DNA of 64,000 bases, taken from positions 124,001 to 188,000 of the IMG/VR virus record IMGVR_UViG_3300038465_000091; one strand, written 5' to 3'. Of the stretch, positions 3,053 to 36,542 are shown piece by piece. Position 1 is the first letter of the stretch; each line of letters opens with the position of its first letter. A program made the translations under genes and the position numbers. Below the pieces are notes generated by a model that saw only the letters and a list, made by a program, of their open reading frames with translations, had not been told where the DNA came from and did no database searches.

Positions 3053-3080
3053 TTGCAAATTTCTCAACTACTGGTATTAT
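3053..3080 (+). promoter_or_regulatory. Sigma70-like promoter
   Basis: TTGCAA (3053-3058), 16-nt spacer, TATTAT (3075-3080); AGGAG RBS at 3087-3091. Confidence 0.6.
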
Positions 3081-3099
3081 GTCTTTAGGAGCTACTCAA

Positions 3100-3540
3100 A
3101 TGCGTAAGATCGATGAAGGCAACATCACGGGTCTCTAGGTTTCACAGCAGCAACCAGCGTACTTCTTCCTTTTCGTCCGTCAAGACATCTCCCTAGCACA
3201 GCAATTAGTCCAAAGCAACCACGCCACGTTTGAAATGGCGAAGCGTTTGCCGTCCGATTACGATCAAACCCCAAATCTCATCCTTGTCGGCGTGCCCGAT
3301 AAGTCAGCTTTATTCCGTGTTATCAACAAGTTAAATGACAATGCCATCGGCCATGAAGTGTTCTATGAGCCCGATGACAACCTCGGGTTGACCGCAGTCG
3401 CGACCTACCCGCTCACGCAGGAGCAGCGTCGTGCGCTTTCCAACTATCGGTTGTGGAAGTCCGACGTTGCCCCTGCACCACAAACCATCGTGCCGCAATT
3501 CAAAGAACAATTCAAGGAGGCATCAGCCTGTGAAATCTAA
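3100..3540 (+). CDS. Peptidyl-tRNA hydrolase (Pth2-like) with an in-frame amber (TAG) at codon 13
   Basis: RBS + ATG 3100: MRKIDEGNITGL-TAG(3136-3138)-VSQQQPAYFFLFVRQDISLAQQLVQSNHATFEMAKRL... in frame with track ORF 3235..3540. The FVRQD...Q..HA, LILVGVPD and TAVA segments match the PTH2 fold pattern. Confidence 0.75.
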
Positions 3541-4174
3541 AGAACTAATTCGGCTTTTGCAAGAGGAAGACCCGACTGGCGAAACAGAAGTCAGCGTCGG
3601 CAACCACGATATTTTCGAGCTTCGCACGGAGCCCGCATACTGGGACGGCAAGCTGCAACTTTTGATTCGTGATCCAGCGAAAGCTCCGTATTACGACATA
3701 GTGGGCGGCAAGTATTGCACGGCAGGCAGCAAGATCGTCATCAACGCCATGAGCATCAGCGATGTGCTGTGGCAGGACCCTGACGCCACTGTGGACTACT
3801 CGGAACTTGGGCAGTACGCCGACAAGTACCGCGAGGCCGATGAGAAGACACGGCGGGCATCCCGTGACGTGACGCTCAAGGTAGGGATGGACGCCTTCTA
3901 TCGTTGGGTAAAGTCGAAGGCGGAAGCGATTCGCCCGGGTGACACGGATTGCCGCAGCGGAGCGGATTACTTCTTCGAAAAGCATTTGCATGTGGACGAC
4001 CCATTGAAGGAATTGCCGAAACAGAAGCACGTAGATTCGACTGGCAAGGAATACGAATGTTGGCCGAGCGTTAACGACCGCCGTGAGTCAGGTTGGGATG
4101 ATCGCATCGAGGTCTACTGGCGTGGCGGCTGGGGTATCAAGATGAAAGACGGCTCCGCTGTCGAAGGGGAATAA
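3530..4174 (+). CDS. Hypothetical phage protein
   Basis: AGGAGG RBS at 3515-3520, GTG at 3530, in track ORF 3431..4174. Confidence 0.75.
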   Translation: MKSKELIRLLQEEDPTGETEVSVGNHDIFELRTEPAYWDGKLQLLIRDPAKAPYYDIVGGKYCTAGSKIVINAMSISDVLWQDPDATVDYSELGQYADKYREADEKTRRASRDVTLKVGMDAFYRWVKSKAEAIRPGDTDCRSGADYFFEKHLHVDDPLKELPKQKHVDSTGKEYECWPSVNDRRESGWDDRIEVYWRGGWGIKMKDGSAVEGE

Positions 4175-4180
4175 GTTTGC

Positions 4181-4270
4181 GGGCGATAAAAGGCGTCGAG
4201 ATCGTGCTTGCTGGATTGCTACGGCGAGCGTGATTGAAGTGCTGGGTGCTGAAAGGTGCCACGCCCACCA
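4181..4270 (+). ncRNA. CCA-ended tRNA-like RNA A (90 nt; acceptor-like stem, long hairpin, GAAA-capped stem)
   Basis: GGGCG/CGCCC-A-CCA ends; internal hairpin ATCGTGCTTGCT...GGCGAGCGTGAT; 3' half homologous to RNA B (5158-5207). Confidence 0.55.
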
Positions 4271-4271
4271 T

Positions 4272-4353
4272 ACGCGGGTAGCTCAGGTGGAGTTTCAGAG
4301 CGTCGGGACGCAAGTCTCGAAGGTCGGTGGTTCGAGTCCGCCCCCGCGTACCA
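4272..4353 (+). tRNA. tRNA-like RNA T1 whose anticodon loop is replaced by a GCAA tetraloop
   Basis: Acceptor ACGCGGG/CCCGCGT-A-CCA, D stem GCTC/GAGC, T arm GGTGG-TTCGAGT-CCGCC; anticodon arm TCGGGAC-GCAA-GTCTCGA. Confidence 0.8.
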
Positions 4354-4381
4354 AGTTTGCTCTTGAGAGCACTAGCGTTTG

Positions 4382-4389
4382 AGTATTAG
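4382..4389 (+). promoter_or_regulatory. AGTATTAG motif, candidate phage-specific promoter element
   Basis: Identical octamer at 4382, 5559, 9139 and 26745, each a short distance upstream of an ORF start. Confidence 0.4.
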
Positions 4390-4394
4390 ATTGT

Positions 4395-5033
4395 ATGACA
4401 AGAAATTTACTGATTACTGCACCGCCGTTCAAAGTGGAAGCATCAATGAAACAACTGGGTTCCAACTTACGTACAGCACGAATTCGACGCGAACTGACGA
4501 TAAAGCAGGTCGCTGAAAGTATAGGGACAGGACCACGCGCCGTCATGGATGCCGAAAAAGGAAAATCCACCACGGGATTAGTTGTTTACACCGCACTTCT
4601 TTGGAAGTATCTACTATTGGATAAAATGCACGAATTAGCCGATCCCCTTCGAGATGAAATCGGGCTTATCTGTGCCTCTAAGCGGGAACCAAAGCGTGCA
4701 ACACGTGCACGTGGAGTTGAAGAGGTGGGTGTCCCGAGCGTGTATTTTATAGGCGACACAAAGCGAGGCATTGTTAAAATTGGAAAATCCAATAAGCCCG
4801 TCAACCGTTTTGAAAGTCTTCAAGCGGCCAATGCGGGGCCGTTGCAACTATTGGCTGAGCTACCCTTTGAAACGGATCATGCCGCTTGGACCGCCGAAAG
4901 CGAACTGCACGCCAAATACAAATACCTCAATACCCACGGTGAGTGGTTTCGATTGGATTCGAGCCTGAACGAGGAAATTCTGGGTATTCGAGCGCGGAGT
5001 TTAAGGAGAGCAGATTTTGTAAGGCCCGAGTAG
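4395..5033 (+). CDS. XRE-type HTH fused to a T5orf172/MUG113-like GIY-YIG nuclease domain
   Basis: N-terminal LRTARIRRELTIKQVAESIG HTH; C-terminal VYFIG...VKIGKS..P..R...LQ......LQLL...E..LH......HGEWF. Its TAG stop lies inside T2. Confidence 0.75.
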   Translation: MTRNLLITAPPFKVEASMKQLGSNLRTARIRRELTIKQVAESIGTGPRAVMDAEKGKSTTGLVVYTALLWKYLLLDKMHELADPLRDEIGLICASKREPKRATRARGVEEVGVPSVYFIGDTKRGIVKIGKSNKPVNRFESLQAANAGPLQLLAELPFETDHAAWTAESELHAKYKYLNTHGEWFRLDSSLNEEILGIRARSLRRADFVRPE

Positions 5034-5114
5034 CTCAGTGTTAGAGCGCCTGTGCAACGCCCGCAAGGGCTACGCCACAGGAGGTCGGTGGTTCGATTCC
5101 ATCCTCGGGTACCA
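5024..5114 (+). tRNA. tRNA-like RNA T2 with a 21-nt hairpin-containing insert in place of the anticodon loop
   Basis: Acceptor GCCCGAG/CTCGGGT-A-CCA with normal D and T arms; stem CCTGTG/CACAGG encloses CAAC-GCCC-GCAA-GGGC-TACGC. Confidence 0.8.
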
Positions 5115-5157
5115 AGTTTGTATGGCGTAGAAGACGAATGTCTTTTATAAAATACAC

Positions 5158-5207
5158 GGGCGGTAGAGCAGCGCAAGCTGGGTGCCGCAAGGCATCACCG
5201 CCCACCA
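5158..5207 (+). ncRNA. 50-nt CCA-ended tRNA minihelix-like RNA B
   Basis: Perfect 7-bp GGGCGGT/ACCGCCC + ACCA; GGTGCC-GCAA-GGCATC stem at the T-arm position; small GC-GCAA-GC hairpin. Confidence 0.65.
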
Positions 5208-5212
5208 AGTTT

Positions 5213-5361
5213 GGGGAGTTCGCTAGGCGAAAACTTAGTAGGTGATATCGCCGAACGGTCAGTAACCGATAGGTGTGAGGCCAGCGGCGTAGTCGCCTTT
5301 AGCGAGGCTTGGCTGAAAAGCGACGAGACTGCGAGGGGTTCGAATCCTCTACTCCCCACCA
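5213..5361 (+). ncRNA. 149-nt tRNA-like RNA C with an expanded central domain
   Basis: Acceptor GGGGAGT/ACTCCCC-A-CCA; T arm AGGGG-TTCGAAT-CCTCT; internal stems CGGT/ACCG and GTCGC/GCGAC; no 7-nt anticodon loop found. Confidence 0.7.
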
Positions 5362-5384
5362 ATTTTTGTGGTAGAATACATTAT

Positions 5385-5460
5385 GCGCCCGTAGCTTAGC
5401 GGTTAAAAGCAGTCGTCTCTAAAACGATGATCGTCGGTTCGAATCCGACTGGGCGCACCA
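5385..5460 (+). tRNA. Amber suppressor tRNA (anticodon CTA)
   Basis: Canonical 76-nt cloverleaf: GCGCCCG/TGGGCGC-A-CCA; anticodon arm GTCGT-CT-CTA-AA-ACGAT (CTA at 5419-5421); T arm GTCGG-TTCGAAT-CCGAC. Confidence 0.85.
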
Positions 5461-5463
5461 AAT

Positions 5464-5543
5464 GGGCGAGTAGCTCAGTGAAAGAGCGGCTTCCGTTCTA
5501 GAACGGAAGAGGGTCGGTGGTTTAAGTCCATCCTCGCCCACCA
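5464..5543 (+). tRNA. tRNA-like RNA T3 with an extended palindromic anticodon arm
   Basis: Acceptor GGGCGAG/CTCGCCC-A-CCA; the anticodon arm is the perfect 20-nt palindrome CTTCCGTTCTAGAACGGAAG; T loop TTTAAGT. Confidence 0.75.
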
Positions 5544-7785: not shown

Positions 7786-7807
7786 CCACGGGCGGCTTTT
7801 GTATTTT
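7780..7807 (+). terminator. Intrinsic terminator (attenuator) immediately before the first tRNA
   Basis: AGCCGCC-CACG-GGCGGCT followed by TTTGTATTTT. Confidence 0.8.
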
Positions 7808-7883
7808 GGCGGGTAGCTCAACTGGCTAGAGCACTGAACTGATAATTCAGAGGTTGGGGGTTCAAGTCCCTCTCCGCCAACCA
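7807..7883 (+). tRNA. trnI: tRNA-Ile(GAT)
   Basis: Cloverleaf; anticodon arm CTGAA-CT-GAT-AA-TTCAG; encoded CCA. Confidence 0.9.
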
Positions 7884-7902
7884 AATTTTAGAGGAGGTAG
7901 TC

Positions 7903-8040
7903 ATGGCTGAGACCTTGGAACAAGAGGATTACTCGACGTGGACTTCGTGCCAGATGTACGGGCACAATTACGTGACTGATGAAGATCAGCCGAACTATCA
8001 CTTCTGTACCGACTGTGACGAAGCTTACTTTGACGAGTGA
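7903..8040 (+). CDS. Small Zn-finger-like protein (45 aa) within the tRNA array
   Basis: GAGGAGG RBS; MAETLEQEDYSTWTSCQMYGHNY...HFCTDCDEAYFDE. Confidence 0.6.
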   Translation: MAETLEQEDYSTWTSCQMYGHNYVTDEDQPNYHFCTDCDEAYFDE

Positions 8041-8050
8041 GTTTCGTTGT

Positions 8051-8124
8051 GGACCCGTCTTCCAATGGCAGGATCGGCGACCGATTATCGCTCAATGGTG
8101 GTTCGAATCCATCTGGGTCTACCA
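8051..8124 (+). tRNA. Atypical tRNA-Ile(GAT) (C33, U37)
   Basis: GGACCCG/TGGGTCT-A-CCA; anticodon arm GGCGA-CC-GAT-TA-TCGCT; T loop TTCGAAT. Confidence 0.65.
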
Positions 8125-8132
8125 AGTTCAAT

Positions 8133-8354
8133 GTGGCATATCGTACCCATACAGGGGCCGATTAGGGGAGTATAAGCCGCCTTATGGGTACAACGGACGA
8201 GCGACCATGCGAGGCGTGCGGAGTCAAGGCGGGTGGGAACCTGCGGATGCATGAGAAGGATTGTGCGTTGATCGCGAGTTATTGTGAAAGGTTTCCCGGG
8301 GGCAAGAACTCGCCGCAGTGGGAACGTAAAGGCCCTCGGATGAATGCGAAACAC
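8133..8354 (+). ncRNA. Putative structured RNA (~220 nt) inside the tRNA array, class unknown
   Basis: Stems GTACCCATA/TATGGGTAC, GCGGGT-GGGA-ACCTGC and GCGAGTT/AACTCGC; flanked by tRNAs; no RBS-led ORF. Confidence 0.45.
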
Positions 8355-8368
8355 TAAAATTTAGAAAT

Positions 8369-8450
8369 GCTAGCGTGGCACAGTGGCGACTGCAATGGTT
8401 CCGTAAACCATCATACAACACCGGGGGTTCGAGTCCCTTCGCTAGCTCCA
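8369..8450 (+). tRNA. trnT: tRNA-Thr(CGT), with C33 and an enlarged variable loop
   Basis: GCTAGCG/CGCTAGC-T-CCA; ATGGT-TC-CGT-AA-ACCAT. Confidence 0.8.
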
Positions 8451-8455
8451 GATTT

Positions 8456-8531
8456 GCAGACGTAACACAATTGGCAGTGTACTTTCTTGGTAAGAAAGAG
8501 GTTGTGGGTTCGACTCCCATCGTCTGCTCCA
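8456..8531 (+). tRNA. trnT: tRNA-Thr(GGT)
   Basis: GCAGACG/CGTCTGC-T-CCA; CTTTC-TT-GGT-AA-GAAAG. Confidence 0.9.
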
Positions 8532-8547
8532 TTTTTAGGAGAACAGC

Positions 8548-8844
8548 ATGTACAACTGTGAGATGTGCAACACGTCGTTCGAGGAAAAGGCGGACTTTCT
8601 CGCCCATCCTCATATCATCCAGAAGAAGCTACCAGTCGGTAGGGTGGAAGTGATGCACAGTTGCGGACACGTGGAAGTAGTCCGCAGTTTCGACGACCCG
8701 ATGTATTCGGAAGAGCGAATCGCAAAGCTCGGGAAGACGAAGGAACAGTTCGTAAAGGAACAGATTGAATGGTACGCGAGCGTGCCCTGTCCCGGCTGCT
8801 ACGTTCCTCGACACGGATATGCGATGAACGGGCCGTGTTGCTAG
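8548..8844 (+). CDS. Zn-finger hypothetical protein
   Basis: AGGAGA RBS; CxxC...H...H, HSCGH and CPGC motifs. Confidence 0.7.
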   Translation: MYNCEMCNTSFEEKADFLAHPHIIQKKLPVGRVEVMHSCGHVEVVRSFDDPMYSEERIAKLGKTKEQFVKEQIEWYASVPCPGCYVPRHGYAMNGPCC

Positions 8845-8886
8845 GCGGGTAAGCGCCTAAGAAAAGTTTAGGCGGAAAGACGCCTA
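8842..8886. repeat. Tandem pair of TAGGCG-N6-CGCCTA hairpins
   Basis: 8842-8859 and 8869-8886. Confidence 0.7.
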
Positions 8887-8895
8887 CAAAAATTT

Positions 8896-8980
8896 GCTAC
8901 TGTGGCTCAGCGGCGACAGCACCGCACCTGTAATGCGGCGGGGAAACCCCACGGGAGTTCGAGTCTCCCCGGTAGCTCCA
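8896..8980 (+). tRNA. trnT: tRNA-Thr(TGT), with C33 and a GGGG-AAA-CCCC variable arm
   Basis: GCTACTG/CGGTAGC-T-CCA; CCGCA-CC-TGT-AA-TGCGG. Confidence 0.8.
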
Positions 8981-9065
8981 AGTTCGATTGATTCGTATGC
9001 CAGAAAGTGACTTATACGTCGCTTTTCAGCTACGGATCGATCTAAAGTGACGTAGAAATCACATT

Positions 9066-9139
9066 TGGGAGATCGTTCAACGGCAGGACGACAGACTTTG
9101 AATCTGTCTATCTAGGTTCGAATCCTAGTCTCCCAGCCA
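9066..9139 (+). tRNA. trnQ: tRNA-Gln(TTG)
   Basis: TGGGAGA/TCTCCCA-G-CCA; ACAGA-CT-TTG-AA-TCTGT. Confidence 0.9.
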
Positions 9140-9151
9140 GTATTAGCCCTT

Positions 9152-9484
9152 ATGGGCTACAAAAACAAAACGGATCAACTAGCAAGCCAACGACGTTGGT
9201 ACAGCAACCATAAAGTTGAAGAGGTCGAACGAGTTCTTCAACGCCGACGTGATTTATACGACTGGCTCCGCAAATTAAAGAGAACTCTTAAGTGCAATCG
9301 GTGTCCCGAGAGTTTTTGGGTATGTTTGGATTTTCATCATACCGATCCAACTGAGAAGGACATGAGTGTGGCGCAGGCTGTTCGCAACGGTTGGAGCAAG
9401 AAACGCATCTTGGCTGAAATTGCCAAATGCGAGGTTCTTTGCAAGAACTGCCACGCGAAAGAGCACGCCAAAATTGGGAAGTAG
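9152..9484 (+). CDS. HNH homing endonuclease between two tRNA-Gln genes
   Basis: CNRC...LDFHH.DP..K......E..KC.VLC.NCH..EH pattern; its TAG stop lies in the following tRNA. Confidence 0.85.
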   Translation: MGYKNKTDQLASQRRWYSNHKVEEVERVLQRRRDLYDWLRKLKRTLKCNRCPESFWVCLDFHHTDPTEKDMSVAQAVRNGWSKKRILAEIAKCEVLCKNCHAKEHAKIGK

Positions 9485-9551
9485 CTCAATTGCGTAGAGC
9501 AACTGCCTTTGAAGCAGAAGGTTGGGGGTTCGAGTCCCTCCTTCCCAGCCA
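9475..9551 (+). tRNA. trnQ: tRNA-Gln(TTG), second divergent copy
   Basis: TGGGAAG/CTTCCCA-G-CCA; CTGC-CT-TTG-AA-GCAG. Confidence 0.85.
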
Positions 9552-19916: not shown

Positions 19917-20137
19917 GTAAGATTGTAAAACGCGAAATGTTCGATGAGGATATGGACAATATAGTTTTGGAGTGTGGTCATGGTCTCATTGCCCACACAA
20001 TCCCGAACCCAATGGTAATTGCCGCAGGATTTCCAGATGCTTCCGTTCCAAAGGATGCTATCGAAATTTCATGTCCCGTCTGTGAATGCAACCCCAGCGA
20101 GCTTTATAACCCTCATCCAGTCCTTAAATGCAGTTAA
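19913..20137 (+). CDS. Small Zn-ribbon hypothetical protein
   Basis: GGAGGAG RBS; LECGH...CPVC. Confidence 0.6.
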   Translation: MSKIVKREMFDEDMDNIVLECGHGLIAHTIPNPMVIAAGFPDASVPKDAIEISCPVCECNPSELYNPHPVLKCS

Positions 20138-22098
20138 ATGAAGAACAGACGCTCGCGGTTGAACACCCGCTCGACGAACCCGCCTGCCTCATCGCAGGCG
20201 CGGGCAGTGGCAAGACCGCTACTATGACCGCCCGAGTCAAATGGCTAATAGCTCATGGCGTCAAGCCCCGCCGTATAGCGGTTATTACGTTCACTAATCG
20301 TGCAGCGGGGGAGCTTGTAGCGCGTATAGGCGTGACCGATCCTCATTCCCCCGATTCTCCGCGTGTTAGCACCATCCACAGCTTGGCCTTATCCGCAATC
20401 CGCAAAAACCCCCTCGGTTTTGGTCTTCAAGAGAGAGTCTCTCCGCTGGATGATTACGATCAGAGTCAGATGATGAAGAAGATCATCGAGCGAGAGAAAA
20501 TTACCGACACAAATCCGTATGCCGTTTTGGAAAAGATTCAGTTTCATCGTGCTCGTGGCGTTGGATTTGTGGTGGACTATACCGAAGAAGTCGCCGAAGA
20601 AGCTGAGCGTATGTACAGTGGGTACCACCTGATGTCGGACACGGATTTGAAGCTTTGGGGATTATACCAAACCGAAAAAACACGAACGAACGTGCTCGAC
20701 TTCGATGACATGATTTTGTTGTGTAATAGGCGGTTTGCAACAGATGAGGATTGGAAACGGCGCATACAAGCGATGTGGGATCATGTGCTTGTCGATGAGG
20801 TTCAAGATATATCGAAGATTCAGTGGCAGTTCATCGAAGGTCTACTCGCACCCGACAACTTTAACCTATTCGTTGTTGGGGATTTGAACCAAAGTATCTA
20901 CTCATTTACCGGGGCGGCACCGTATCTCCTCAAACAATACAGCGAGAACTGGCGAAGTGTAGTTCCTCGCATGTACAAAATCGTCCGCAATCACCGCAGC
21001 GTACCTGAAATCGTTCGATTGGCTAACGTTATTCAATCTAAAATGGGCGAGGGTTCTATTCCGCTAAAAATGGAAAGCTGGCGTGGTGGAAATGGAGAAA
21101 GCGGCAAAATAGAAATCCTCAAAGGGGTCATGGCGTCAGAGATCGCCGCCGATATCGCTGTTGAGATTTTCAAAGACAACGAAAAGTTCCTGCGTGATGA
21201 ACGTACACGTGCCGAAGGTGGGACACCCCGAGAGTCACAAGCGAAACCGATCTCCTATCGAGAAAATTTCATTCTGGTAAGAGCCGCAATCCAGATTCGT
21301 GATATTGAAACTGAGCTAGTAAGGCGCAGAATTCCATACGTCGTGCGAGGAGGTCGGGGCTTACTCCAAACTGAAGAAGTTAGAGATGTACTAGCGTACA
21401 TGCGGTTGGCTACGAACCATAAAGATTTTATGGCTTTCGTTCGAGCCGCTCAGGTGCCTCGACGCGGGTGTGGCGAGGTTGCTTTGGAGAAAATCCGCGC
21501 CATAGCCAATGGTAAATACGACGGTGATCTAATCGCCGCCGCTGAGGGGGATAAAAATGCGAAGATCGCGTCCTTTGGCGGCGTTGTCAGACTCGTCACC
21601 CAATTTAGTGAGAACCCCGTTGCTATGCTTGAACGAACGCTTGCCTTGACCCAGTACACAACTTACATCAGCGACAAGTACAAAAGAGATAGTGGTAAAG
21701 TCAAAACCAAACTTGAGAATCTTGATCGTTTCGGTTCACTCATTGATGGGCTGGTTGCTGACGGCGCGATGACCGCTGAGGACATGATTTTCCAACTCAC
21801 GCTTGATCGTCCGAAAGATGACGATGAGTCGGGAGCCGTCACGATCAGCACAATTCATAGCGCCAAGGGACTAGAGGCCAAAAGAGTCTATGTTAATAAT
21901 GTAACAGAGGGCAGCCTCCCTCACAAATTTTCGTCTGGAAATGAAGAAGAAATTCGCGAAGAGAGGCGTTTGTTTTACGTCGCCTGCACACGAGCACGAG
22001 ATTATCTGATCCTGTGTATTCCTGCCCTGCTTCAGCAGGGTCCCAATGTTACTAACCTTCGGCCATCCCGTTTCTTGATAGAAATCGGCGTTGCCTAG
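20128..22098 (+). CDS. UvrD/PcrA/Rep SF1 DNA helicase
   Basis: AGAGSGKT, ITFTNRAA, DEVQD, VGDLNQSIY, NHRS, TIHSAKGLE and EERRLFYVACTRAR. Confidence 0.95.
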   Translation: MQLNEEQTLAVEHPLDEPACLIAGAGSGKTATMTARVKWLIAHGVKPRRIAVITFTNRAAGELVARIGVTDPHSPDSPRVSTIHSLALSAIRKNPLGFGLQERVSPLDDYDQSQMMKKIIEREKITDTNPYAVLEKIQFHRARGVGFVVDYTEEVAEEAERMYSGYHLMSDTDLKLWGLYQTEKTRTNVLDFDDMILLCNRRFATDEDWKRRIQAMWDHVLVDEVQDISKIQWQFIEGLLAPDNFNLFVVGDLNQSIYSFTGAAPYLLKQYSENWRSVVPRMYKIVRNHRSVPEIVRLANVIQSKMGEGSIPLKMESWRGGNGESGKIEILKGVMASEIAADIAVEIFKDNEKFLRDERTRAEGGTPRESQAKPISYRENFILVRAAIQIRDIETELVRRRIPYVVRGGRGLLQTEEVRDVLAYMRLATNHKDFMAFVRAAQVPRRGCGEVALEKIRAIANGKYDGDLIAAAEGDKNAKIASFGGVVRLVTQFSENPVAMLERTLALTQYTTYISDKYKRDSGKVKTKLENLDRFGSLIDGLVADGAMTAEDMIFQLTLDRPKDDDESGAVTISTIHSAKGLEAKRVYVNNVTEGSLPHKFSSGNEEEIREERRLFYVACTRARDYLILCIPALLQQGPNVTNLRPSRFLIEIGVA

Positions 22099-32879: not shown

Positions 32880-35800
32880 ATGGCACTGTTCACATCCTAC
32901 GCACCACCGGGCGTCTACACGCAAGTAATTCTGCAAACCAACTCGGCCCCCACGCTGGGGACTGCCCGTATTCCCGTAATCATCGGTGAAGGTCAACAGT
33001 TTTTCAGTAACAACAACGTTGAGTTGTTCCGTGGTTCCTCCTCAGTTCAGGATGACCAGTCGGTCAGTGAAAACATCTCGAACCAAGTCACAGGGTTGAC
33101 TCGCACTTTCAACACGAGCTTCTATCCAGTCACAGACGGTACTGGCAAGGGCGTGATCTCAAACAACCCCACTGACGTTCAAGTCGAATCGATTGACCAG
33201 AGTGGCAACGTTGTTCCCGTAACAGTGATCTCACTGAACGGTGCAACGGGCGTATTCACAACGCAACTCATCATCCCCACGGGCTTCGAGCTTCTCATCA
33301 CCTACTTCTTCAAGCGCGGTGACACGTTCATCGGCATCGGTGGTGTGACTCCGTACAACGTCCCAGAAAACCTTCTGTCACAGATTCCGAGCACGGCATC
33401 CCTGACAGTGGACGACAGCGGCGGCTCACCTCCGGGAACTCAGTCGGTTGTGTTGGGTCTCTCGACTCCCGGTCAGACGGGTAATCTCGTCACCCTCCAG
33501 TTCGTTGCAGGTGCAGCGGTTCCAGATGCTCAGGCGGTTGGCGGTGCAGGCACAGACGCCATCTCGATCAACATCACAGGTCCGAGCGCAACACGTACCC
33601 TCGCTGATCTCGTCAGCCTCGTCAACGCTGGTATTCCAACGCTCGACGGCGGATACCTGACGGTCACAACGACCACGGGCGCACTCAATGCTCCCCTGAC
33701 GGTAAGCTCTGGTGCACAGCCTTTCACGGGCGGCAGCGGCGGCAACAGTAACACGGTATTCAAAGTCGCCCACACCCCAATCGTAGACGGCACCAACGGT
33801 GGTGTGGTCACGACTGACGTGACGAAGGTGATCGTTCAGGTGAACGGCAACCCAGTCACAGTCGCATCGTTGAACGGTGCGGCAGGAACCTTCACGTTGG
33901 CTTCGCCTGTTTCCGCGCCAGTCGCGTTGGGCGGAACTACAACGTCCTTCACGATTCAATACTACTTCAACTCGTGGCAGAATACGTATGACTTGCTTCC
34001 CGGTCAGAACATTGCTTCGATCACTCAGGTCGGTCTCGGCCCTAATCGTGCAGACTTTGTTCAAGGAACGGATTACGTCCTCGGCAGCATCACTGCTCCC
34101 GATGGTTCCACAGTCCAGACCATCAATTGGGGTGCTTCGGTATCCTCAGCAATCGGACAGTCGGCTGCTGGTGAACTCGCCAACTTCACTCCCGCTGAAG
34201 TCACTACCGCACTAAGGGACGACCAAGTTTACCTCCAACCACTGACTGGCGCTGTAAATGGCAAGAACGTGGTCTTCTCGCTCCCAGATGTGCCGACTGA
34301 CGGAAGCGGTCTCTCTATTGCGACCGATAACCCCGCATTGGTTCAGGTCTACGTCGGCTCCGATCCTCTGGAAGCTTTCCTCAACGGCGCTGTACGTGTG
34401 GCTCAACTCTCTGGTGCAAACCAGCTTGTGACCCTGTACAACCCGCCAGCGTCGGGCAGCCTCGTGTACGCCTCGTACTATCGCAGCCAGTTGGCTGACC
34501 ATCAGTACAGCATCACGGTCGTCAACCCGGGCTACGCAGGCAACGGCACATTCATCATCACCGATGAGCTTGGCCGCGTTGCCCCCCTCGTGGAATTCAA
34601 CTTGGCTGCCAGCACCGTTGCTCAGAACGGGCCGTTCCAAGACACGGGTGTTGTTTACCCGAATGACTTCTCCGATGCACAGGCTCAGGCAGGCGCAGCG
34701 GTTGACGAAACAGTCACACTGACCTTCAACAACGACGGCAACACCACTATCGTCCTCGCCATCCAAGCAAGGCTGGCATTGACGTTCGGCGCTGGTACGC
34801 TGACGTTCCATGCGACGACTCCGGGCATCGGCGGCAACCTTGTCCAAATCGTGATTGACGCTACGGATTTGAACGCCGACCCAGTATCGATCAATGGTGA
34901 CATCGTTACCATCTACTCAAGCTGGGCAGGAACGGCATTGTCCCTCGCTCAGATCGCAGCCTTGTTCCCATCTGGCGAAACGATTGATGGTGGGCAGATT
35001 CTCTGCACCGCGTCGGGTACGACTTCAGGCAACGCCGCGACAACGGGTGCCACGAACCTGTCTGGTGGTGCAAACGCAATTACCACCCCCGTCACGCACA
35101 GCTATACGGTCTCTTCGACCAACTCGAAGGGTTCGGGCTCGCTGAACAACATCGGCTACCTTGACCAGACTTACGAGGACCTTGCAACTGGGTTCCGTGT
35201 GACGATTGTCAATCCCACCGACCACGCGGACTACGGTGTGCCGAACATTCCATCGGCTTACAACTTCGAACCCGGCGACAAACTCATCTTCAACGTGTAC
35301 GCCGATGCAACGGGTGCCAACGCAGCCGTCCGCAATGCGGGCACGCCGGGTATCGCTCCCGCACAGGCGAACAACCTGATCGCAATTCAAGGTCTCGACA
35401 CCACGGTCATCTCGAACTTCGGTTCGACCGCTGGCGACTCCGTGATTGTCAGCACATTCAACAAGTCGGGCAACAACCCCAACATCGGCGAGTTCTACTA
35501 TGTGTCGTTCACAACCGCAAAACAGGCGGCTGATTACGCGATCCATCTTTACACCGATCCAAAGGTTGCTTACGCGAACTATGGTCAGCCGAGCACAGTC
35601 AACCGCGTCTCTCTCGCCATCCAGTTGATGGCCGCTAACGGCGTGCAGACCTTCGGCGTCATCCAAGTCCCAGTGGTCCCGGGCACCAATCAGGGAACCT
35701 CGCAAGACTTCATGAACGCAATCCAAACTCTCACCATAGCCCTGCCCGGTTACACTACAAAGGCAAACATCATTTGCCCTCTGAGCACCGATCCTACAGT

Positions 35801-36542
35801 GCACCAGTTCTTGAGCCGTCAGTTGACGACTCAGGCGAACGTTCGTCAGAAGGGCGAGGCTATCGGCTTCGTCGGCTACGATCAGTTCCAGACACCCGCC
35901 ACGATGCGTGCAAACGCTCGTGGTTTGGCAAACAAGCGCATGATTGCAATCGGTGCCCCAGTCGCAGGTATCCTCATCACTGACCCGAACACGGGTGTGG
36001 CGGTGGAATACGCGGTAAGCGGCGAATTCATGGCAGCCGCCATGATGGGCTTGAACGCAAACCCCTCGAACGACGTGGCTCAGTCTCTCACGTTCCAGAA
36101 CTTGGTGGGCTTCAGCCGCTTGCTTGTGACCTACGACGACCCGACAATGGACTCGATGGCTGCGGATGGTCTGACCGACCTGTTGAACAACAACGGCGCT
36201 CTGCTCATCCGCCACTACAAGACCACTGACCCATCGAACCCGCTCACCAGCGAGCCGACAGTTACCACGATTACGGATTACGTTTCGCAGATATTCCGTA
36301 CAGACCTCAACCAATTCATCGGTCGCAAGCTGCTCGACTCGCTTGTTACCGACATTCAGGTGGTCTGCAACGCCCGCCTGTCGTCCTTGGTGAACCAGCA
36401 GATCATCAGCGGTTATCAGAACTTGTCGGTTGTGCAAGACTCGACCGATCCGACACAGGCCGACGTTACCGTCACCTTCAAGCCGATGTTCTGCTTGTTG
36501 TATGTACAGGTCACATTCATCGTCCAGACGCAATTGAGCTAA
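32880..36542 (+). CDS. Tail sheath protein (1220 aa, with inserted domains)
   Basis: Y..PGVYT N-terminus; C-terminal sheath domain (GEAIGFVG...LTFQNLVGF...IVQTQLS). Confidence 0.9.
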   Translation: MALFTSYAPPGVYTQVILQTNSAPTLGTARIPVIIGEGQQFFSNNNVELFRGSSSVQDDQSVSENISNQVTGLTRTFNTSFYPVTDGTGKGVISNNPTDVQVESIDQSGNVVPVTVISLNGATGVFTTQLIIPTGFELLITYFFKRGDTFIGIGGVTPYNVPENLLSQIPSTASLTVDDSGGSPPGTQSVVLGLSTPGQTGNLVTLQFVAGAAVPDAQAVGGAGTDAISINITGPSATRTLADLVSLVNAGIPTLDGGYLTVTTTTGALNAPLTVSSGAQPFTGGSGGNSNTVFKVAHTPIVDGTNGGVVTTDVTKVIVQVNGNPVTVASLNGAAGTFTLASPVSAPVALGGTTTSFTIQYYFNSWQNTYDLLPGQNIASITQVGLGPNRADFVQGTDYVLGSITAPDGSTVQTINWGASVSSAIGQSAAGELANFTPAEVTTALRDDQVYLQPLTGAVNGKNVVFSLPDVPTDGSGLSIATDNPALVQVYVGSDPLEAFLNGAVRVAQLSGANQLVTLYNPPASGSLVYASYYRSQLADHQYSITVVNPGYAGNGTFIITDELGRVAPLVEFNLAASTVAQNGPFQDTGVVYPNDFSDAQAQAGAAVDETVTLTFNNDGNTTIVLAIQARLALTFGAGTLTFHATTPGIGGNLVQIVIDATDLNADPVSINGDIVTIYSSWAGTALSLAQIAALFPSGETIDGGQILCTASGTTSGNAATTGATNLSGGANAITTPVTHSYTVSSTNSKGSGSLNNIGYLDQTYEDLATGFRVTIVNPTDHADYGVPNIPSAYNFEPGDKLIFNVYADATGANAAVRNAGTPGIAPAQANNLIAIQGLDTTVISNFGSTAGDSVIVSTFNKSGNNPNIGEFYYVSFTTAKQAADYAIHLYTDPKVAYANYGQPSTVNRVSLAIQLMAANGVQTFGVIQVPVVPGTNQGTSQDFMNAIQTLTIALPGYTTKANIICPLSTDPTVHQFLSRQLTTQANVRQKGEAIGFVGYDQFQTPATMRANARGLANKRMIAIGAPVAGILITDPNTGVAVEYAVSGEFMAAAMMGLNANPSNDVAQSLTFQNLVGFSRLLVTYDDPTMDSMAADGLTDLLNNNGALLIRHYKTTDPSNPLTSEPTVTTITDYVSQIFRTDLNQFIGRKLLDSLVTDIQVVCNARLSSLVNQQIISGYQNLSVVQDSTDPTQADVTVTFKPMFCLLYVQVTFIVQTQLS

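What the first reader, a model, noticed from the sequence alone, without database searches (positions are those of the whole stretch)
3053..5460. Amber-gated peptidyl-tRNA hydrolase upstream of its own amber-suppressor tRNA
Seen in sequence: promoter, AGGAG RBS and ATG 3100 give 12 codons, then TAG (3136-3138), then the frame continues into the PTH2-like core (FVRQD...QSNHA). No alternative start with an RBS lies between the TAG and that motif, so a functional protein needs read-through. About 2.2 kb downstream on the same strand, with no obvious terminator between, is a canonical tRNA with anticodon CTA (5419-5421). Many other genes in the window end normally in TAG, so this is a local switch, not genome-wide recoding. 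Inference: Pth synthesis reports the balance between suppressor tRNA and release factor 1 (conceptually like RF2 autoregulation). The hydrolase would be made when termination is impaired and peptidyl-tRNA accumulates.
Basis: partly seen in the sequence, partly recalled or inferred. Interest (0 to 1): 0.88.

Follow-up and report, generated by a model that had tools for sequence, protein, structure and literature searches.

The report
Amber-gated tRNA hydrolase gene in jumbo phages
A jumbo phage has a stop codon right after the start of a tRNA-hydrolase-like gene, so the protein can only be made when the phage's own suppressor tRNA reads that stop; this design recurs in about 70 other phage lineages, which gives these puzzling suppressor tRNAs a likely target.

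Summary
AGGAG and ATG 3100 are followed by 12 codons, then TAG 3136-3138. The frame then runs 133 codons to TAA 3540, and no in-frame ATG/GTG/TTG occurs before 3235. The first strand and helix of the fold lie in the stretch before 3235. A canonical tRNA with anticodon CUA lies at 5385-5460.

The product has a PTH2 (peptidyl-tRNA hydrolase 2) fold, though the window protein misses the Pfam threshold and the catalytic Lys aligns to Gln.

In 138 related phage loci (94 clusters), 72 clusters carry the same device: SD, ATG, usually 1-3 codons, TAG, then a purine (71 of 72). Cultured jumbo phages have it too (GAP32, BF, Yen9-03, ME3, XacN1, RsoM2USA, Arash, RAS14). Two independent lineages carry TGA instead, and both have a UCA tRNA next door. 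A sister clade lost the gate through a homing-endonuclease insertion and also lacks the CUA tRNA.

An HD-type partner gene, fused to the PTH2-like gene in XacN1, is also amber-interrupted in most lineages. TAG is an ordinary stop for about 14 of 56 window ORFs, so this is a local, selected translational gate, not genome recoding.

Why the gene is gated remains inferred. I found no prior description.

The parts
3053..3080 (+). sigma-70-like promoter match (TTGCAA, 16 nt spacer, TG-TATTAT)
   Evidence: Consensus scan. This stretch is 95% identical in the L006 clade. Function was not tested.
3088..3092 (+). Shine-Dalgarno AGGAG, 7 nt before ATG 3100
   Evidence: Sequence. An SD-like motif precedes the leader in 59 of 72 gated relatives.
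3100..3135 (+). 12-codon leader (MRKIDEGNITGL), the longest leader variant seen
   Evidence: Relatives read MRKAIVGDL, MRKAIGDL, MKLQLEGL, or mostly just ATG + 1-2 codons.
3136..3138 (+). gate codon TAG, followed by G (a purine at +4)
   Evidence: The +4 base is A in 49, G in 22, C in 1 and T in 0 of 72 clusters. Ordinary TAG stops in the window show 6 purines of 14.
3139..3540 (+). PTH2-fold protein body (133 codons + TAA). Strand 1 and helix 1 (FVRQD...QSNHA) lie before the first internal Met at 3235.
   Evidence: AF2 model with pLDDT 82.7. The top 13 Foldseek PDB hits are all PTH2 family, with E from 5e-6 to 1e-4. Homologue alignment A1. The XacN1 homologue passes Pfam PF01981.
3530..4174 (+). 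downstream ORF of 214 aa, function unknown, whose start overlaps the end of the gated gene
   Evidence: no family hit.
4272..4353 (+). tRNA-like gene with a GCAA tetraloop in place of the anticodon loop; ends in CCA
   Evidence: Rfam tRNA 42 bits; fold.
4395..5033 (+). HTH + MUG113/T5orf172 ORF. It looks like a mobile insert and explains the unusually long distance between the gene and the tRNA.
   Evidence: Pfam. In many relatives the suppressor lies only 0.1-0.5 kb from the gene.
5385..5460 (+). canonical tRNA with anticodon CUA, the proposed reader of the gate; G1-C72, A73, encoded CCA
   Evidence: ARAGORN; Rfam 65.5 bits; cloverleaf MFE.
5464..5543 (+). tRNA-like gene reported as 'ctag'; probably an anticodon-less tRNA-like (8-bp stem + CUAG tetraloop), not a suppressor

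Best explanation
**What it is.** The gene at 3100-3540 encodes a PTH2-fold protein that probably acts on the ester at tRNA 3' ends. Its translation is gated by a stop codon.

**How the gate works.** Ribosomes start at a good SD/ATG and translate 12 codons, then meet UAG.
- If RF1 acts first, only a 12-residue peptide is released.
- If the phage's own aminoacylated CUA tRNA (5385-5460) decodes the UAG, translation continues to give a protein of about 146 residues.

Enzyme output therefore depends on two things together: the mRNA, and the activity of charged suppressor relative to RF1.

**Why this looks like a selected device.** It is conserved across jumbo phages as SD, ATG, usually 1-3 sense codons, UAG, then a purine. 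The purine is the context known to favour tRNA suppression. The gate sits in the non-conserved N-terminal tail. Failure therefore costs only a tiny peptide, and the identity of the inserted residue should not matter.

**The wider unit.** The same suppressors also gate an HD-type phosphoesterase partner, which is fused to the PTH2-like domain in XacN1 and RAS14. The unit is thus a small suppressor-dependent regulon of enzymes that probably act on tRNA 3' ends. It sits inside the phage's tRNA/tmRNA module.

**Shown here.** The anatomy, the fold, the conservation, the codon-anticodon covariation, the co-loss of gate and suppressor, and the specificity to these families.

**Inferred.**
- That read-through really occurs.
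- Which amino acid is inserted.
- The purpose. My preferred reading is that the gate ties synthesis of a potentially harmful tRNA-ester hydrolase to the presence of functional, charged phage tRNA. This could be an AND gate or delay, possibly with negative feedback if the enzyme deacylates the suppressor.
For: **Anatomy**
- Coordinates and frame are as described.
- A product starting at ATG 3235 would lack strand 1 and helix 1 of the fold.

**Fold**
- The top 13 Foldseek hits are all PTH2 structures, with TM 0.67-0.74.
- The XacN1 homologue passes Pfam PTH2 (25.3 bits against a 23-bit cut-off).

**Conservation**
- 72 of 94 clusters at 95% identity, drawn from 138 loci, carry the N-terminal stop gate.
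- The gate lies on both sides of the family tree.
- It is present in cultured phages BF, GAP32, Yen9-03, ME3, XacN1, RsoM2USA, Arash and RAS14, and in huge-phage assemblies of 595 and 735 kb.

**Covariation**
- The only two TGA-gated lineages (L025, L115) sit in different major clades.
- Each has a UCA tRNA 0.1-0.5 kb away and no CUA tRNA.
- Only 3 of 94 clusters have any UCA tRNA, giving p = 7e-4.

**Co-loss**
- In the sister clade L006, an Endo-VII-type homing endonuclease gene split the leader and TAG from the gene.
- A new ATG is now used there. ARAGORN finds no CUA tRNA in the syntenic tRNA array of that locus.

**Independent amber positions in the same genes**
- There is a mid-gene TAG in L041 and a second TAG near codon 35 in six lineages.
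- The HD-type partner has N-terminal gates in about 19 lineages. It has internal TAGs at codons 41, 48 or 23 in others.

**Context and specificity**
- The +4 base is a purine in 71 of 72 gates, against a baseline of 0.64 (p = 4e-13) and 6 of 14 at ordinary TAG stops.
- An unbiased scan of all loci found 96 gate-like sites. Of these, 64 are in the PTH2/HD families.
- Suppressor tRNAs lie within 5-6 kb in 53 of 72 stop-dependent clusters, against 5 of 14 independent ones (Fisher p = 0.011).
Against: - There are no expression data. Read-through, charging of the tRNA and the inserted residue are all untested.
- 19 of 72 gated clusters show no suppressor within the fetched flanks. It may lie elsewhere: in XacN1 the suppressors are in the terminal repeats (PMC5852040).
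- The gate-suppressor association is not corrected for phylogeny, and the independent-pairs test is underpowered.
- A few lineages have an ATG directly after the TAG (L036, L070, L079, L139, L140). That would allow suppressor-independent reinitiation.
- The window protein does not reach the Pfam PTH2 threshold. The catalytic Lys of PTH2 aligns to a conserved Gln, so the chemistry may differ.
- TAG ends about a quarter of the window's ORFs. An efficient suppressor would also extend those proteins. Suppression must therefore be weak, timed, or context-dependent.
Confidence: 0.8

Rival explanations
1. One reading: the gate is a sensor of termination capacity. The hydrolase is made mainly when RF1 is limiting or termination is impaired and peptidyl-tRNA accumulates, in the manner of RF2 autoregulation.
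For: - A UAG decoded in competition with RF1 is inherently sensitive to RF1 activity.
- The gene sits in a module with a tmRNA. In one relative that module also holds an RF-1-domain ORF.
- The PTH2 fold fits a role in clearing peptidyl-tRNA.
Against: - Nothing links the product to RF1 or to UAG recognition, so no feedback loop is demonstrated.
- A dedicated suppressor tRNA would be unnecessary for a pure RF1 sensor. Yet the tRNA co-varies with the gate and is lost with it.
- The HD-type partner is gated too.
- The catalytic Lys of PTH2 is not conserved.
Confidence: 0.15
2. The short leader is a regulatory mini-ORF. The protein is made by termination-reinitiation, or from a non-canonical start just after the TAG, without any suppression. 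The suppressor tRNAs serve something else.
For: - ATG-NNN-stop resembles two-codon minigenes.
- The codon after the gate is ATH (Ile) in 30 of 72 clusters.
- Five lineages have ATG directly after the TAG.
Against: - In 42 of 72 clusters, including the window (GTT), the next codon is not even a near-cognate start.
- The window has no start-like codon before the conserved motif.
- This reading does not explain the two independent TGA-with-UCA-tRNA pairings.
- It does not explain the mid-gene TAGs in L041 and in the HD-type genes of BF, GAP32 and Yen9-03.
- It does not explain the loss of the CUA tRNA together with the gate.
Confidence: 0.07
3. The phage is on the way to genome-wide TAG reassignment (code 15-like). 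The TAG in this gene is one of several that accumulated neutrally once a suppressor was present.
For: Phages with reassigned TAG and suppressor tRNAs are well known. A path through suppressor acquisition has been proposed (bioRxiv 10.1101/2021.08.26.457843). The 735-kb assembly LR756501 has two TAGs in this gene.
Against: - Only 1 of about 56 window ORFs is interrupted, and 14 end in TAG.
- GC content is 53%.
- Gate-like sites are concentrated in two linked families (64 of 96).
- The gate sits at a fixed position with a fixed +4 context across deep divergence. That indicates selection, not drift.
Confidence: 0.05
4. The gene is a pseudogene or the TAG is an assembly error, or a truncated protein from ATG 3235 is the real product.
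For: Gene callers and several GenBank records annotate only the truncated ORF or nothing at all.
Against: - Two samples give identical sequence.
- The TAG is conserved in 72 clusters, while the codons right after it are under clear protein-level conservation.
- A product starting at 3235 lacks strand 1 and helix 1, the best-conserved motif.
Confidence: 0.02

Closest known systems
Stop-codon-reassigned phages (crAss-like, Lak, Agate, Jade; codes 15 and 4) with phage suppressor tRNAs
   Same: A phage-encoded suppressor tRNA is needed to translate phage genes that carry in-frame TAG or TGA. Regulation of gene expression by the suppressor has been proposed.
   Different: In those phages, hundreds of in-frame stops lie in late and lysis genes, the stop is no longer used as a terminator, and GC is low. 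Here there is one gene per 64 kb (two or three per module). The stop sits at codon 2-13 of a translation-module gene. TAG is still a normal terminator, and GC is 53%.
RF2 (prfB) autoregulation by an early in-frame stop
   Same: An early in-frame stop in a translation-related gene makes output depend on competition at the A site.
   Different: prfB uses a +1 frameshift stimulated by an internal SD, and its product reads the very stop codon. Here the frame is unchanged, a dedicated tRNA reads the stop, and no link between the product and stop recognition is known.
bldA tRNA-Leu(UUA) regulon of Streptomyces
   Same: A single specialised tRNA licenses translation of a small set of genes that contain its otherwise rare codon (knowledge; see PMC10732093).
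   Different: bldA reads a sense codon and controls development regulators. Here the tRNA reads a stop codon, is viral, and sits next to its targets.
Synthetic suppressor-tRNA AND gates / feed-forward loops
   Same: An amber codon near the start of a gene, plus a co-expressed suppressor tRNA, removes leaky expression (PMC7969014).
   Different: Those circuits are engineered. This appears to be a natural, conserved counterpart.
PTH2 / Bit1 peptidyl-tRNA hydrolases (PF01981)
   Same: Same alpha/beta fold. One family member passes the Pfam threshold. The motif order matches: (V)R.D ... Q..HA ... EPD ... T.(A).
   Different: The window protein gives no Pfam hit at E <= 0.1. The loop carrying the catalytic Lys is two residues shorter, and the Lys aligns to a conserved Gln.
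Lambda bar minigenes (two-codon ORFs that provoke peptidyl-tRNA drop-off, toxic in pth mutants)
   Same: SD + ATG + one sense codon + stop is the commonest form of the leader (37 of 72 clusters). The link to a Pth-like enzyme is suggestive (knowledge).
   Different: bar minigenes have no in-frame continuation. The window's leader has 12 codons. No toxicity data exist.

Membership tests
PTH2 (PF01981) peptidyl-tRNA hydrolase | Sequence match to the family model above its curated threshold | tested here: not met
   The window protein gives no Pfam or NCBIfam hit at E <= 0.1. The XacN1 homologue (33% identical) does pass, with 25.3 bits against a 23-bit cut-off.
PTH2 (PF01981) peptidyl-tRNA hydrolase | PTH2 alpha/beta fold | tested here: met
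   AF2 model pLDDT 82.7. The top 13 Foldseek PDB hits are all PTH2 (2zv3, 3erj, 1q7s, 1wn2, 1rlk, 1xty), with probability 1.0 and TM 0.67-0.74. The next hit has E = 0.23.
PTH2 (PF01981) peptidyl-tRNA hydrolase | Catalytic Lys before helix 1 and Asp in the strand-3/4 loop (knowledge of archaeal Pth2) | tested here: inconclusive
   The HMMER alignment to PDB 24bt_A places its 'KK' opposite the conserved 'QQ', and the loop is two residues shorter. An Asp (EPD) is nearly invariant, but its equivalence to the catalytic Asp was not checked residue by residue.
PTH2 (PF01981) peptidyl-tRNA hydrolase | Hydrolysis of peptidyl-tRNA / complementation of pth(ts) | not testable with these tools
   Needs biochemistry or genetics.
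Stop-codon-reassigned (code 15) phage | Many genes with in-frame TAG, and TAG not used as a terminator | tested here: not met
   1 of about 56 window ORFs is interrupted, and 14 of 56 end in TAG.
Stop-codon-reassigned (code 15) phage | Phage-encoded suppressor tRNA with anticodon CUA | tested here: met
   tRNA at 5385-5460.
RF2-type autoregulatory recoding | Early in-frame stop bypassed by a +1 frameshift with an SD-like stimulator | tested here: not met
   The body is in the same frame as the leader in the window and in all gated relatives.
RF2-type autoregulatory recoding | The product acts on the recoding event itself (feedback) | not testable with these tools
   It is unknown whether the PTH2-like protein affects suppressor charging or termination.
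tRNA-licensed regulon (bldA-like logic) | The codon read by the special tRNA occurs, as a sense position, only in a small specific gene set | tested here: met
   The unbiased scan found 64 of 96 gate-like sites in the PTH2/HD families, 2 in a third family, and the rest as singletons.
tRNA-licensed regulon (bldA-like logic) | Target codon and tRNA anticodon change together | tested here: met
   Two independent TGA gates, each with a UCA tRNA beside the gene.
Lambda bar-type minigene | SD + ATG + one sense codon + stop, with no in-frame continuation | tested here: not met
   The window leader has 12 codons. In every case a conserved ORF continues in frame.

The most novel reading that the evidence does not exclude
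The stop-codon gate is a translation-state sensor. Two enzymes that appear to act on tRNA 3' ends are an ester hydrolase (PTH2-like) and a phosphoesterase (HD-type, related to the C-terminal part of tRNA nucleotidyltransferases). Both would be synthesised only while a processed, CCA-intact, aminoacylated phage tRNA is available. If they deacylate or trim tRNA, their own synthesis falls, giving homeostatic feedback on the phage's private tRNA pool. The anticodon-less tRNA-like RNAs in the same module may be their substrates or decoys. On this reading, the dedicated purpose of suppressor tRNAs in standard-code jumbo phages is this switch.
Probability: 0.25. Interest if true: 0.9.

Novelty: new variant of a known kind. 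Interest (0 to 1): 0.82.

Why it matters
Several jumbo-phage genome papers report suppressor tRNAs whose targets are unknown. XacN1's authors read through all 18 amber stops and found nothing (PMC5852040). The phiKp24 authors left the purpose open (PMC8386662).

This finding supplies a specific, conserved target set: a PTH2-like gene and its HD-type partner. These genes were missed because the stop sits at codon 2-13, so gene callers truncate or drop them.

It would be a natural example of a suppressor-tRNA AND gate of the kind synthetic biologists build. It is also a possible intermediate on the road to full stop-codon reassignment.

It also flags systematic mis-annotation. Genes are split or missing in BF, GAP32, Yen9-03/04, RsoM2USA, Arash and XacN1, and a CUA tRNA is labelled tRNA-Phe in Arash.

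The idea is directly testable, because cultured phages of Enterobacterales and other Gammaproteobacteria carry the device.

Tried and rejected
- **Direct family searches** of the window protein against Pfam, NCBIfam and PDB sequences gave no hits. Fold search and a homologue were needed instead.
Cellular homologues and wider sampling were therefore not examined.
- **Amino-acid identity of the suppressors.** I tried to infer it from similarity to sense tRNAs. The best identities were 0.65-0.79 with no consistent isotype. At least three scaffold classes exist.
- **A read-through-stimulating RNA structure after the gate.** The mean z-score of the 60 nt downstream is -0.46 over 67 lineages, so there is no support.
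- **Phylogenetically independent pairs test** of gate against suppressor presence was underpowered.
- **A second read-through candidate** at 38554-38712/38746 was rejected. ATG 38746 has its own strong SD, and the upstream ORF looks spurious.
- **The 'second suppressor' at 5464-5543** was rejected as such. It folds into a long hairpin with a tetraloop.
- **Five literature searches** found no description of the gate. The library lacks most subscription journals, so prior description cannot be excluded.


Full report
**1. The observation**

The window is from a jumbo myovirus with 53% GC. It carries a tail sheath gene at 32880-36542 and a helicase at 20128-22098. The window is identical over 9,537 nt to two IMG/VR contigs from different samples, one of them 223.5 kb long.

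At the reported place, AGGAG (3088-3092) and ATG 3100 open a frame of 12 codons (MRKIDEGNITGL) that ends at TAG 3136-3138. The same frame then runs 133 codons to TAA 3538-3540. The first in-frame ATG/GTG/TTG after the TAG is ATG 3235. No near-cognate start precedes the FVRQD motif either.

A canonical tRNA with anticodon CUA lies at 5385-5460 on the same strand and scores 65.5 bits against Rfam tRNA. A promoter-like match lies at 3053-3080. The simple scan finds no + strand terminator-like site between the gene and the tRNA. Both of these are consensus matches only.

TAG is an ordinary terminator for 14 of 56 greedy ORFs. No other window ORF looks TAG-interrupted.

**2. What the protein is**

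Pfam, NCBIfam and PDB sequence searches with the window protein find nothing. PHROGs gives only families of unknown function, plus a weak 'hydrolase' match.

An AlphaFold model built on 31 homologues has pLDDT 82.7. Its order of elements is strand 8-14, helix 19-36, strand 46-52, helix 55-67, strands 72-77 and 83-89, helix 94-99. The 13 best Foldseek matches in the PDB are all PTH2 peptidyl-tRNA hydrolases: MJ0051, AF2095, human Bit1, PH1539, TA0108 and Sulfolobus Pth2. Their E-values run from 5e-6 to 1e-4 and TM scores from 0.67 to 0.74. The next hit has E = 0.23.

A family member, the C-terminal domain of Xanthomonas phage XacN1 ORF364, passes the Pfam PTH2 threshold. So the 'PTH2-like' label holds at the level of fold.

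Two reservations remain. A profile alignment places the conserved Gln-Gln of the phage family opposite the Lys-Lys of a solved PTH2, and the loop there is two residues shorter. The chemistry is therefore unproven.

Strand 1 and helix 1 are the best-conserved part of the family. They lie between the TAG and Met 3235, so a product starting at 3235 could not fold.

**3. The gate is a conserved device**

Two scans of viral contigs, a tblastn search of GenBank phages and three contig look-ups gave 142 loci. The first 138 were classified. I used an HMM on stop-masked translations and clustered them at 95% identity into 94 clusters.

Seventy-two clusters carry a stop just upstream of the Y-x-[YF]-x-F-V-R-x-D motif. 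The stop is preceded by a short in-frame leader, with no ATG in between.
- The leader, counting the start codon, has 2 codons in 37 clusters, 3 in 16, and 1 (ATG directly followed by TAG) in 2.
- The window's 12 codons is the longest leader seen.
- The start is ATG in 70 of 72, and an SD-like motif precedes it in 59 of 72.
- The base after the stop is A in 49, G in 22, C in 1 and T in 0.

The purine rate of 71 of 72 compares with a first-codon-position purine rate of 0.64 in window genes (p = 4e-13). It compares with 6 of 14 at ordinary TAG stops (p = 5e-7). By established work on nonsense suppression in E. coli (my own knowledge), a 3' purine favours suppressor tRNAs. The residues encoded after the gate vary (I, V, N, T, D and others), so the constraint is on the nucleotide.

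Ungated homologues begin M-T-[PKHE]-Y.... The gate therefore falls in a non-conserved tail, and the inserted residue should not matter.

The gate occurs on both sides of the family tree. Ungated members are scattered singletons or small clades.

Cultured phages carry it:

| Phage | Leader and gate |
|---|---|
| Serratia BF | ATG ACG CAC TAG A |
| Cronobacter GAP32 | ATG GCA CAA TAG A |
| Yersinia fHe-Yen9-03 | ATG TCT CAC TAG A |
| Acinetobacter ME3 | ATG ACT TAG A |
| Ralstonia RsoM2USA | ATG TTG TAG A |
| Salmonella Arash | ATG CTG TAG A |
| Xanthomonas XacN1 and Stenotrophomonas RAS14 | ATG AAG TAG A |
| 595-kb and 735-kb huge-phage assemblies | gate present |

In GenBank these genes are unannotated, truncated, or started at an internal Met.

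**4.

Most gated loci have one to three CUA tRNAs on the same strand within 0.1-4 kb.

The decisive evidence is covariation. Only two lineages have TGA instead of TAG.
- L025 reads ATG CAT TGA A.
- L115 reads AGGAGG..ATG GTC TTC ACG TGA A.

They sit in different major clades, and well-supported branches force two separate changes. Each has a tRNA with anticodon UCA beside the gene: 0.5 kb downstream in L025, and ending 27 nt before the leader ATG in L115. Neither has a CUA tRNA. Only 3 of 94 clusters have any UCA tRNA, so the chance of this pairing is 7e-4.

A natural loss points the same way. In the sister clade of the window (L006-L009), the leader and TAG are still present, reading MRKAIGDL*VSQQQPPYF. 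An Endonuclease-VII-type homing endonuclease gene has been inserted on the opposite strand right after them. The PTH2-like gene now starts at a new ATG (MTHIYIFVRQD). ARAGORN finds no CUA tRNA in the otherwise syntenic tRNA array.

Overall, a suppressor lies within the fetched flanks in 53 of 72 stop-dependent clusters, against 5 of 14 independent ones (Fisher p = 0.011). This test is not corrected for phylogeny, and the independent-pairs test was underpowered.

**5. A small amber regulon, not recoding**

An HD-type gene lies directly after the PTH2-like gene in many loci.
- Its motifs are HDCGKP, HFPNHA, HDMD.H, EIHSNA and FKIK.K.
- Its AF2 model has pLDDT 95.6.
- Its profile hits the C-terminal half of class-II tRNA nucleotidyltransferases 3wfo-3wfr (E = 3.5e-4).
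- Foldseek gives the same entries first, then HD phosphodiesterases.

In XacN1, RAS14 and L127 this gene is fused in front of the PTH2-like domain behind a single gate. That argues the two work together.

As a separate gene it is also amber-dependent in most lineages.
- It has ATG-NNN-TAG-R gates in about 19 lineages, including RsoM2USA.
- It has a conserved internal TAG at codon 41 in BF, GAP32, Yen9-03/04, CBB and their metagenomic relatives. Annotators split the gene there.
- It has a TAG at codon 48 in L070 and at codon 23 in L108.

The PTH2-like gene itself has a mid-gene TAG in L041. It has a second TAG near codon 35 in six lineages, including the 735-kb phage. A third gated family of unknown function occurs in L013 and L014.

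I ran an unbiased scan of all loci and the window, on both strands. The pattern was SD + ATG + up to 6 codons + TAG/TGA + an ORF of at least 70 codons. It gave 96 unique hits: 64 in the PTH2/HD families, 2 in the third family, and 30 unrelated singletons. No HD-type homologue lies within this 64-kb window.

**6. How it most likely works**

Shown: the anatomy, the fold, the conservation, the covariation, the co-loss and the specificity.

Inferred: ribosomes that meet RF1 at the UAG release a tiny peptide. Ribosomes that meet charged suppressor continue. Output therefore requires both the mRNA and active suppressor.

The purpose is not established. I favour licensing. On this reading, enzymes that act on tRNA 3' ends, and are potentially harmful, are made only where and when the phage's own tRNA set is expressed, processed and charged. 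If they deacylate the suppressor, that would add negative feedback.

It does not explain why a dedicated tRNA co-evolves with the gate.

Reinitiation without suppression is unlikely, for three reasons.
- The codon after the gate is not start-like in 42 of 72 clusters, the window included.
- Mid-gene TAGs occur.
- The stop codon and the tRNA anticodon change together.

Five lineages do have ATG directly after the TAG and may bypass the gate. No conserved RNA structure follows the gate.

One point remains open. TAG ends a quarter of the window's ORFs, so suppression must be weak, timed, or favoured by the early-codon and +4 context.

**7. Known relatives and novelty**

The closest known kind is stop-codon reassignment in crAss-like, Lak and other gut phages with suppressor tRNAs. 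This case differs in scale, position, targets and genome code.

In logic it resembles the bldA tRNA regulon and engineered suppressor-tRNA AND gates (PMC7969014). The resemblance to RF2 autoregulation is only superficial, because there is no frameshift.

Five full-text searches found no description of the gate. Jumbo-phage papers state that the targets of their suppressor tRNAs are unknown (PMC5852040; PMC8386662). The family is large, with 2,536 representative clusters at E <= 1e-3. Database 'full-length' members that I checked are in fact gated, their called start being the first ATG or GTG after the TAG.

**Verdict:** a real, selected feature. It is a new variant of a known kind, it is testable in cultured phages, and its biological purpose is still open.

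Noticed in passing
window 4272-4353, 5024-5114, 5157-5207, 5464-5543; also L004 6552-6627, L010 8538-8611, L011 7007-7081 and 7402-7477, L023 6354-6428: A family of tRNA-like genes has normal acceptor, D and T arms and an encoded CCA. The anticodon loop is replaced by a long stem capped with a tetraloop (GCAA, GAAA, CUCG, CUAG) or by an extended arm. They cannot decode. They sit between the gated gene and the suppressor tRNAs, and could be substrates or decoys for the PTH2-like and HD-type enzymes.
   Followed up: partly
window 5211-5362: An element of about 150 nt has a tRNA-like acceptor stem (ggggagt/actcccc), a T arm and CCA, but a large unexplained insert. It has no Rfam match.
   Followed up: no
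L001 1966-2308 (about 0.9 kb before the window start); many other loci: A phage-encoded tmRNA (tag AEAPKAFAAHA) is conserved 1.5-4 kb upstream of the gated gene. Together, the tmRNA, the gated hydrolase and the tRNA array form a conserved translation module.
   Followed up: partly
L049 3312-3878, L053 6321-6887, L058 6321-6887 (Serratia BF, Cronobacter GAP32, Yersinia fHe-Yen9-03): The HD-type partner gene has a conserved internal TAG (...ISELDTG*GDP...). GenBank annotates it as two short hypothetical genes.
   Followed up: yes
L013 7787-8248, L014 7969-8451: A third, unrelated gene family of unknown function is gated by ATG ACA TAG R. Its first canonical start lies 75-88 codons later.
   Followed up: partly
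L006 5285-6051: An Endonuclease-VII/HNH-type homing endonuclease gene is inserted on the opposite strand into the N-terminus of the PTH2-like gene. It leaves a relic leader and TAG, and the clade has no CUA tRNA in the syntenic array.
   Followed up: yes
window 4395-5033: An HTH + MUG113/T5orf172 (GIY-YIG-like) ORF lies between the gated gene and the tRNAs. Its end overlaps the tRNA-like gene at 5024. It is probably a mobile insert.
   Followed up: partly
L052 4301-4375 (Salmonella phage Arash, OQ632216): A tRNA with anticodon CTA is annotated as tRNA-Phe in the record. The gated gene is annotated only as a 50-residue 'peptidyl-tRNA hydrolase' fragment.
   Followed up: partly
L056 5989-6366 (LR756501, 735-kb phage assembly): The PTH2-like gene has two in-frame TAGs, at codon 3 and at about codon 37, with two CUA tRNAs 2.4 kb downstream. 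The second TAG position is shared with L098, L105, L112, L116 and L117.
   Followed up: partly
L141 1-103: An RF-1-domain (PF00472) ORF lies about 5 kb upstream of a gated PTH2-like gene, inside a tRNA array. It may be an ArfB-like rescue factor in the same module.
   Followed up: no
window 7807-9551: Isoacceptor tRNAs come in pairs with the same anticodon but very different scaffolds: two Ile-GAT at 7807 and 8051, and two Gln-TTG at 9066 and 9475.
   Followed up: no
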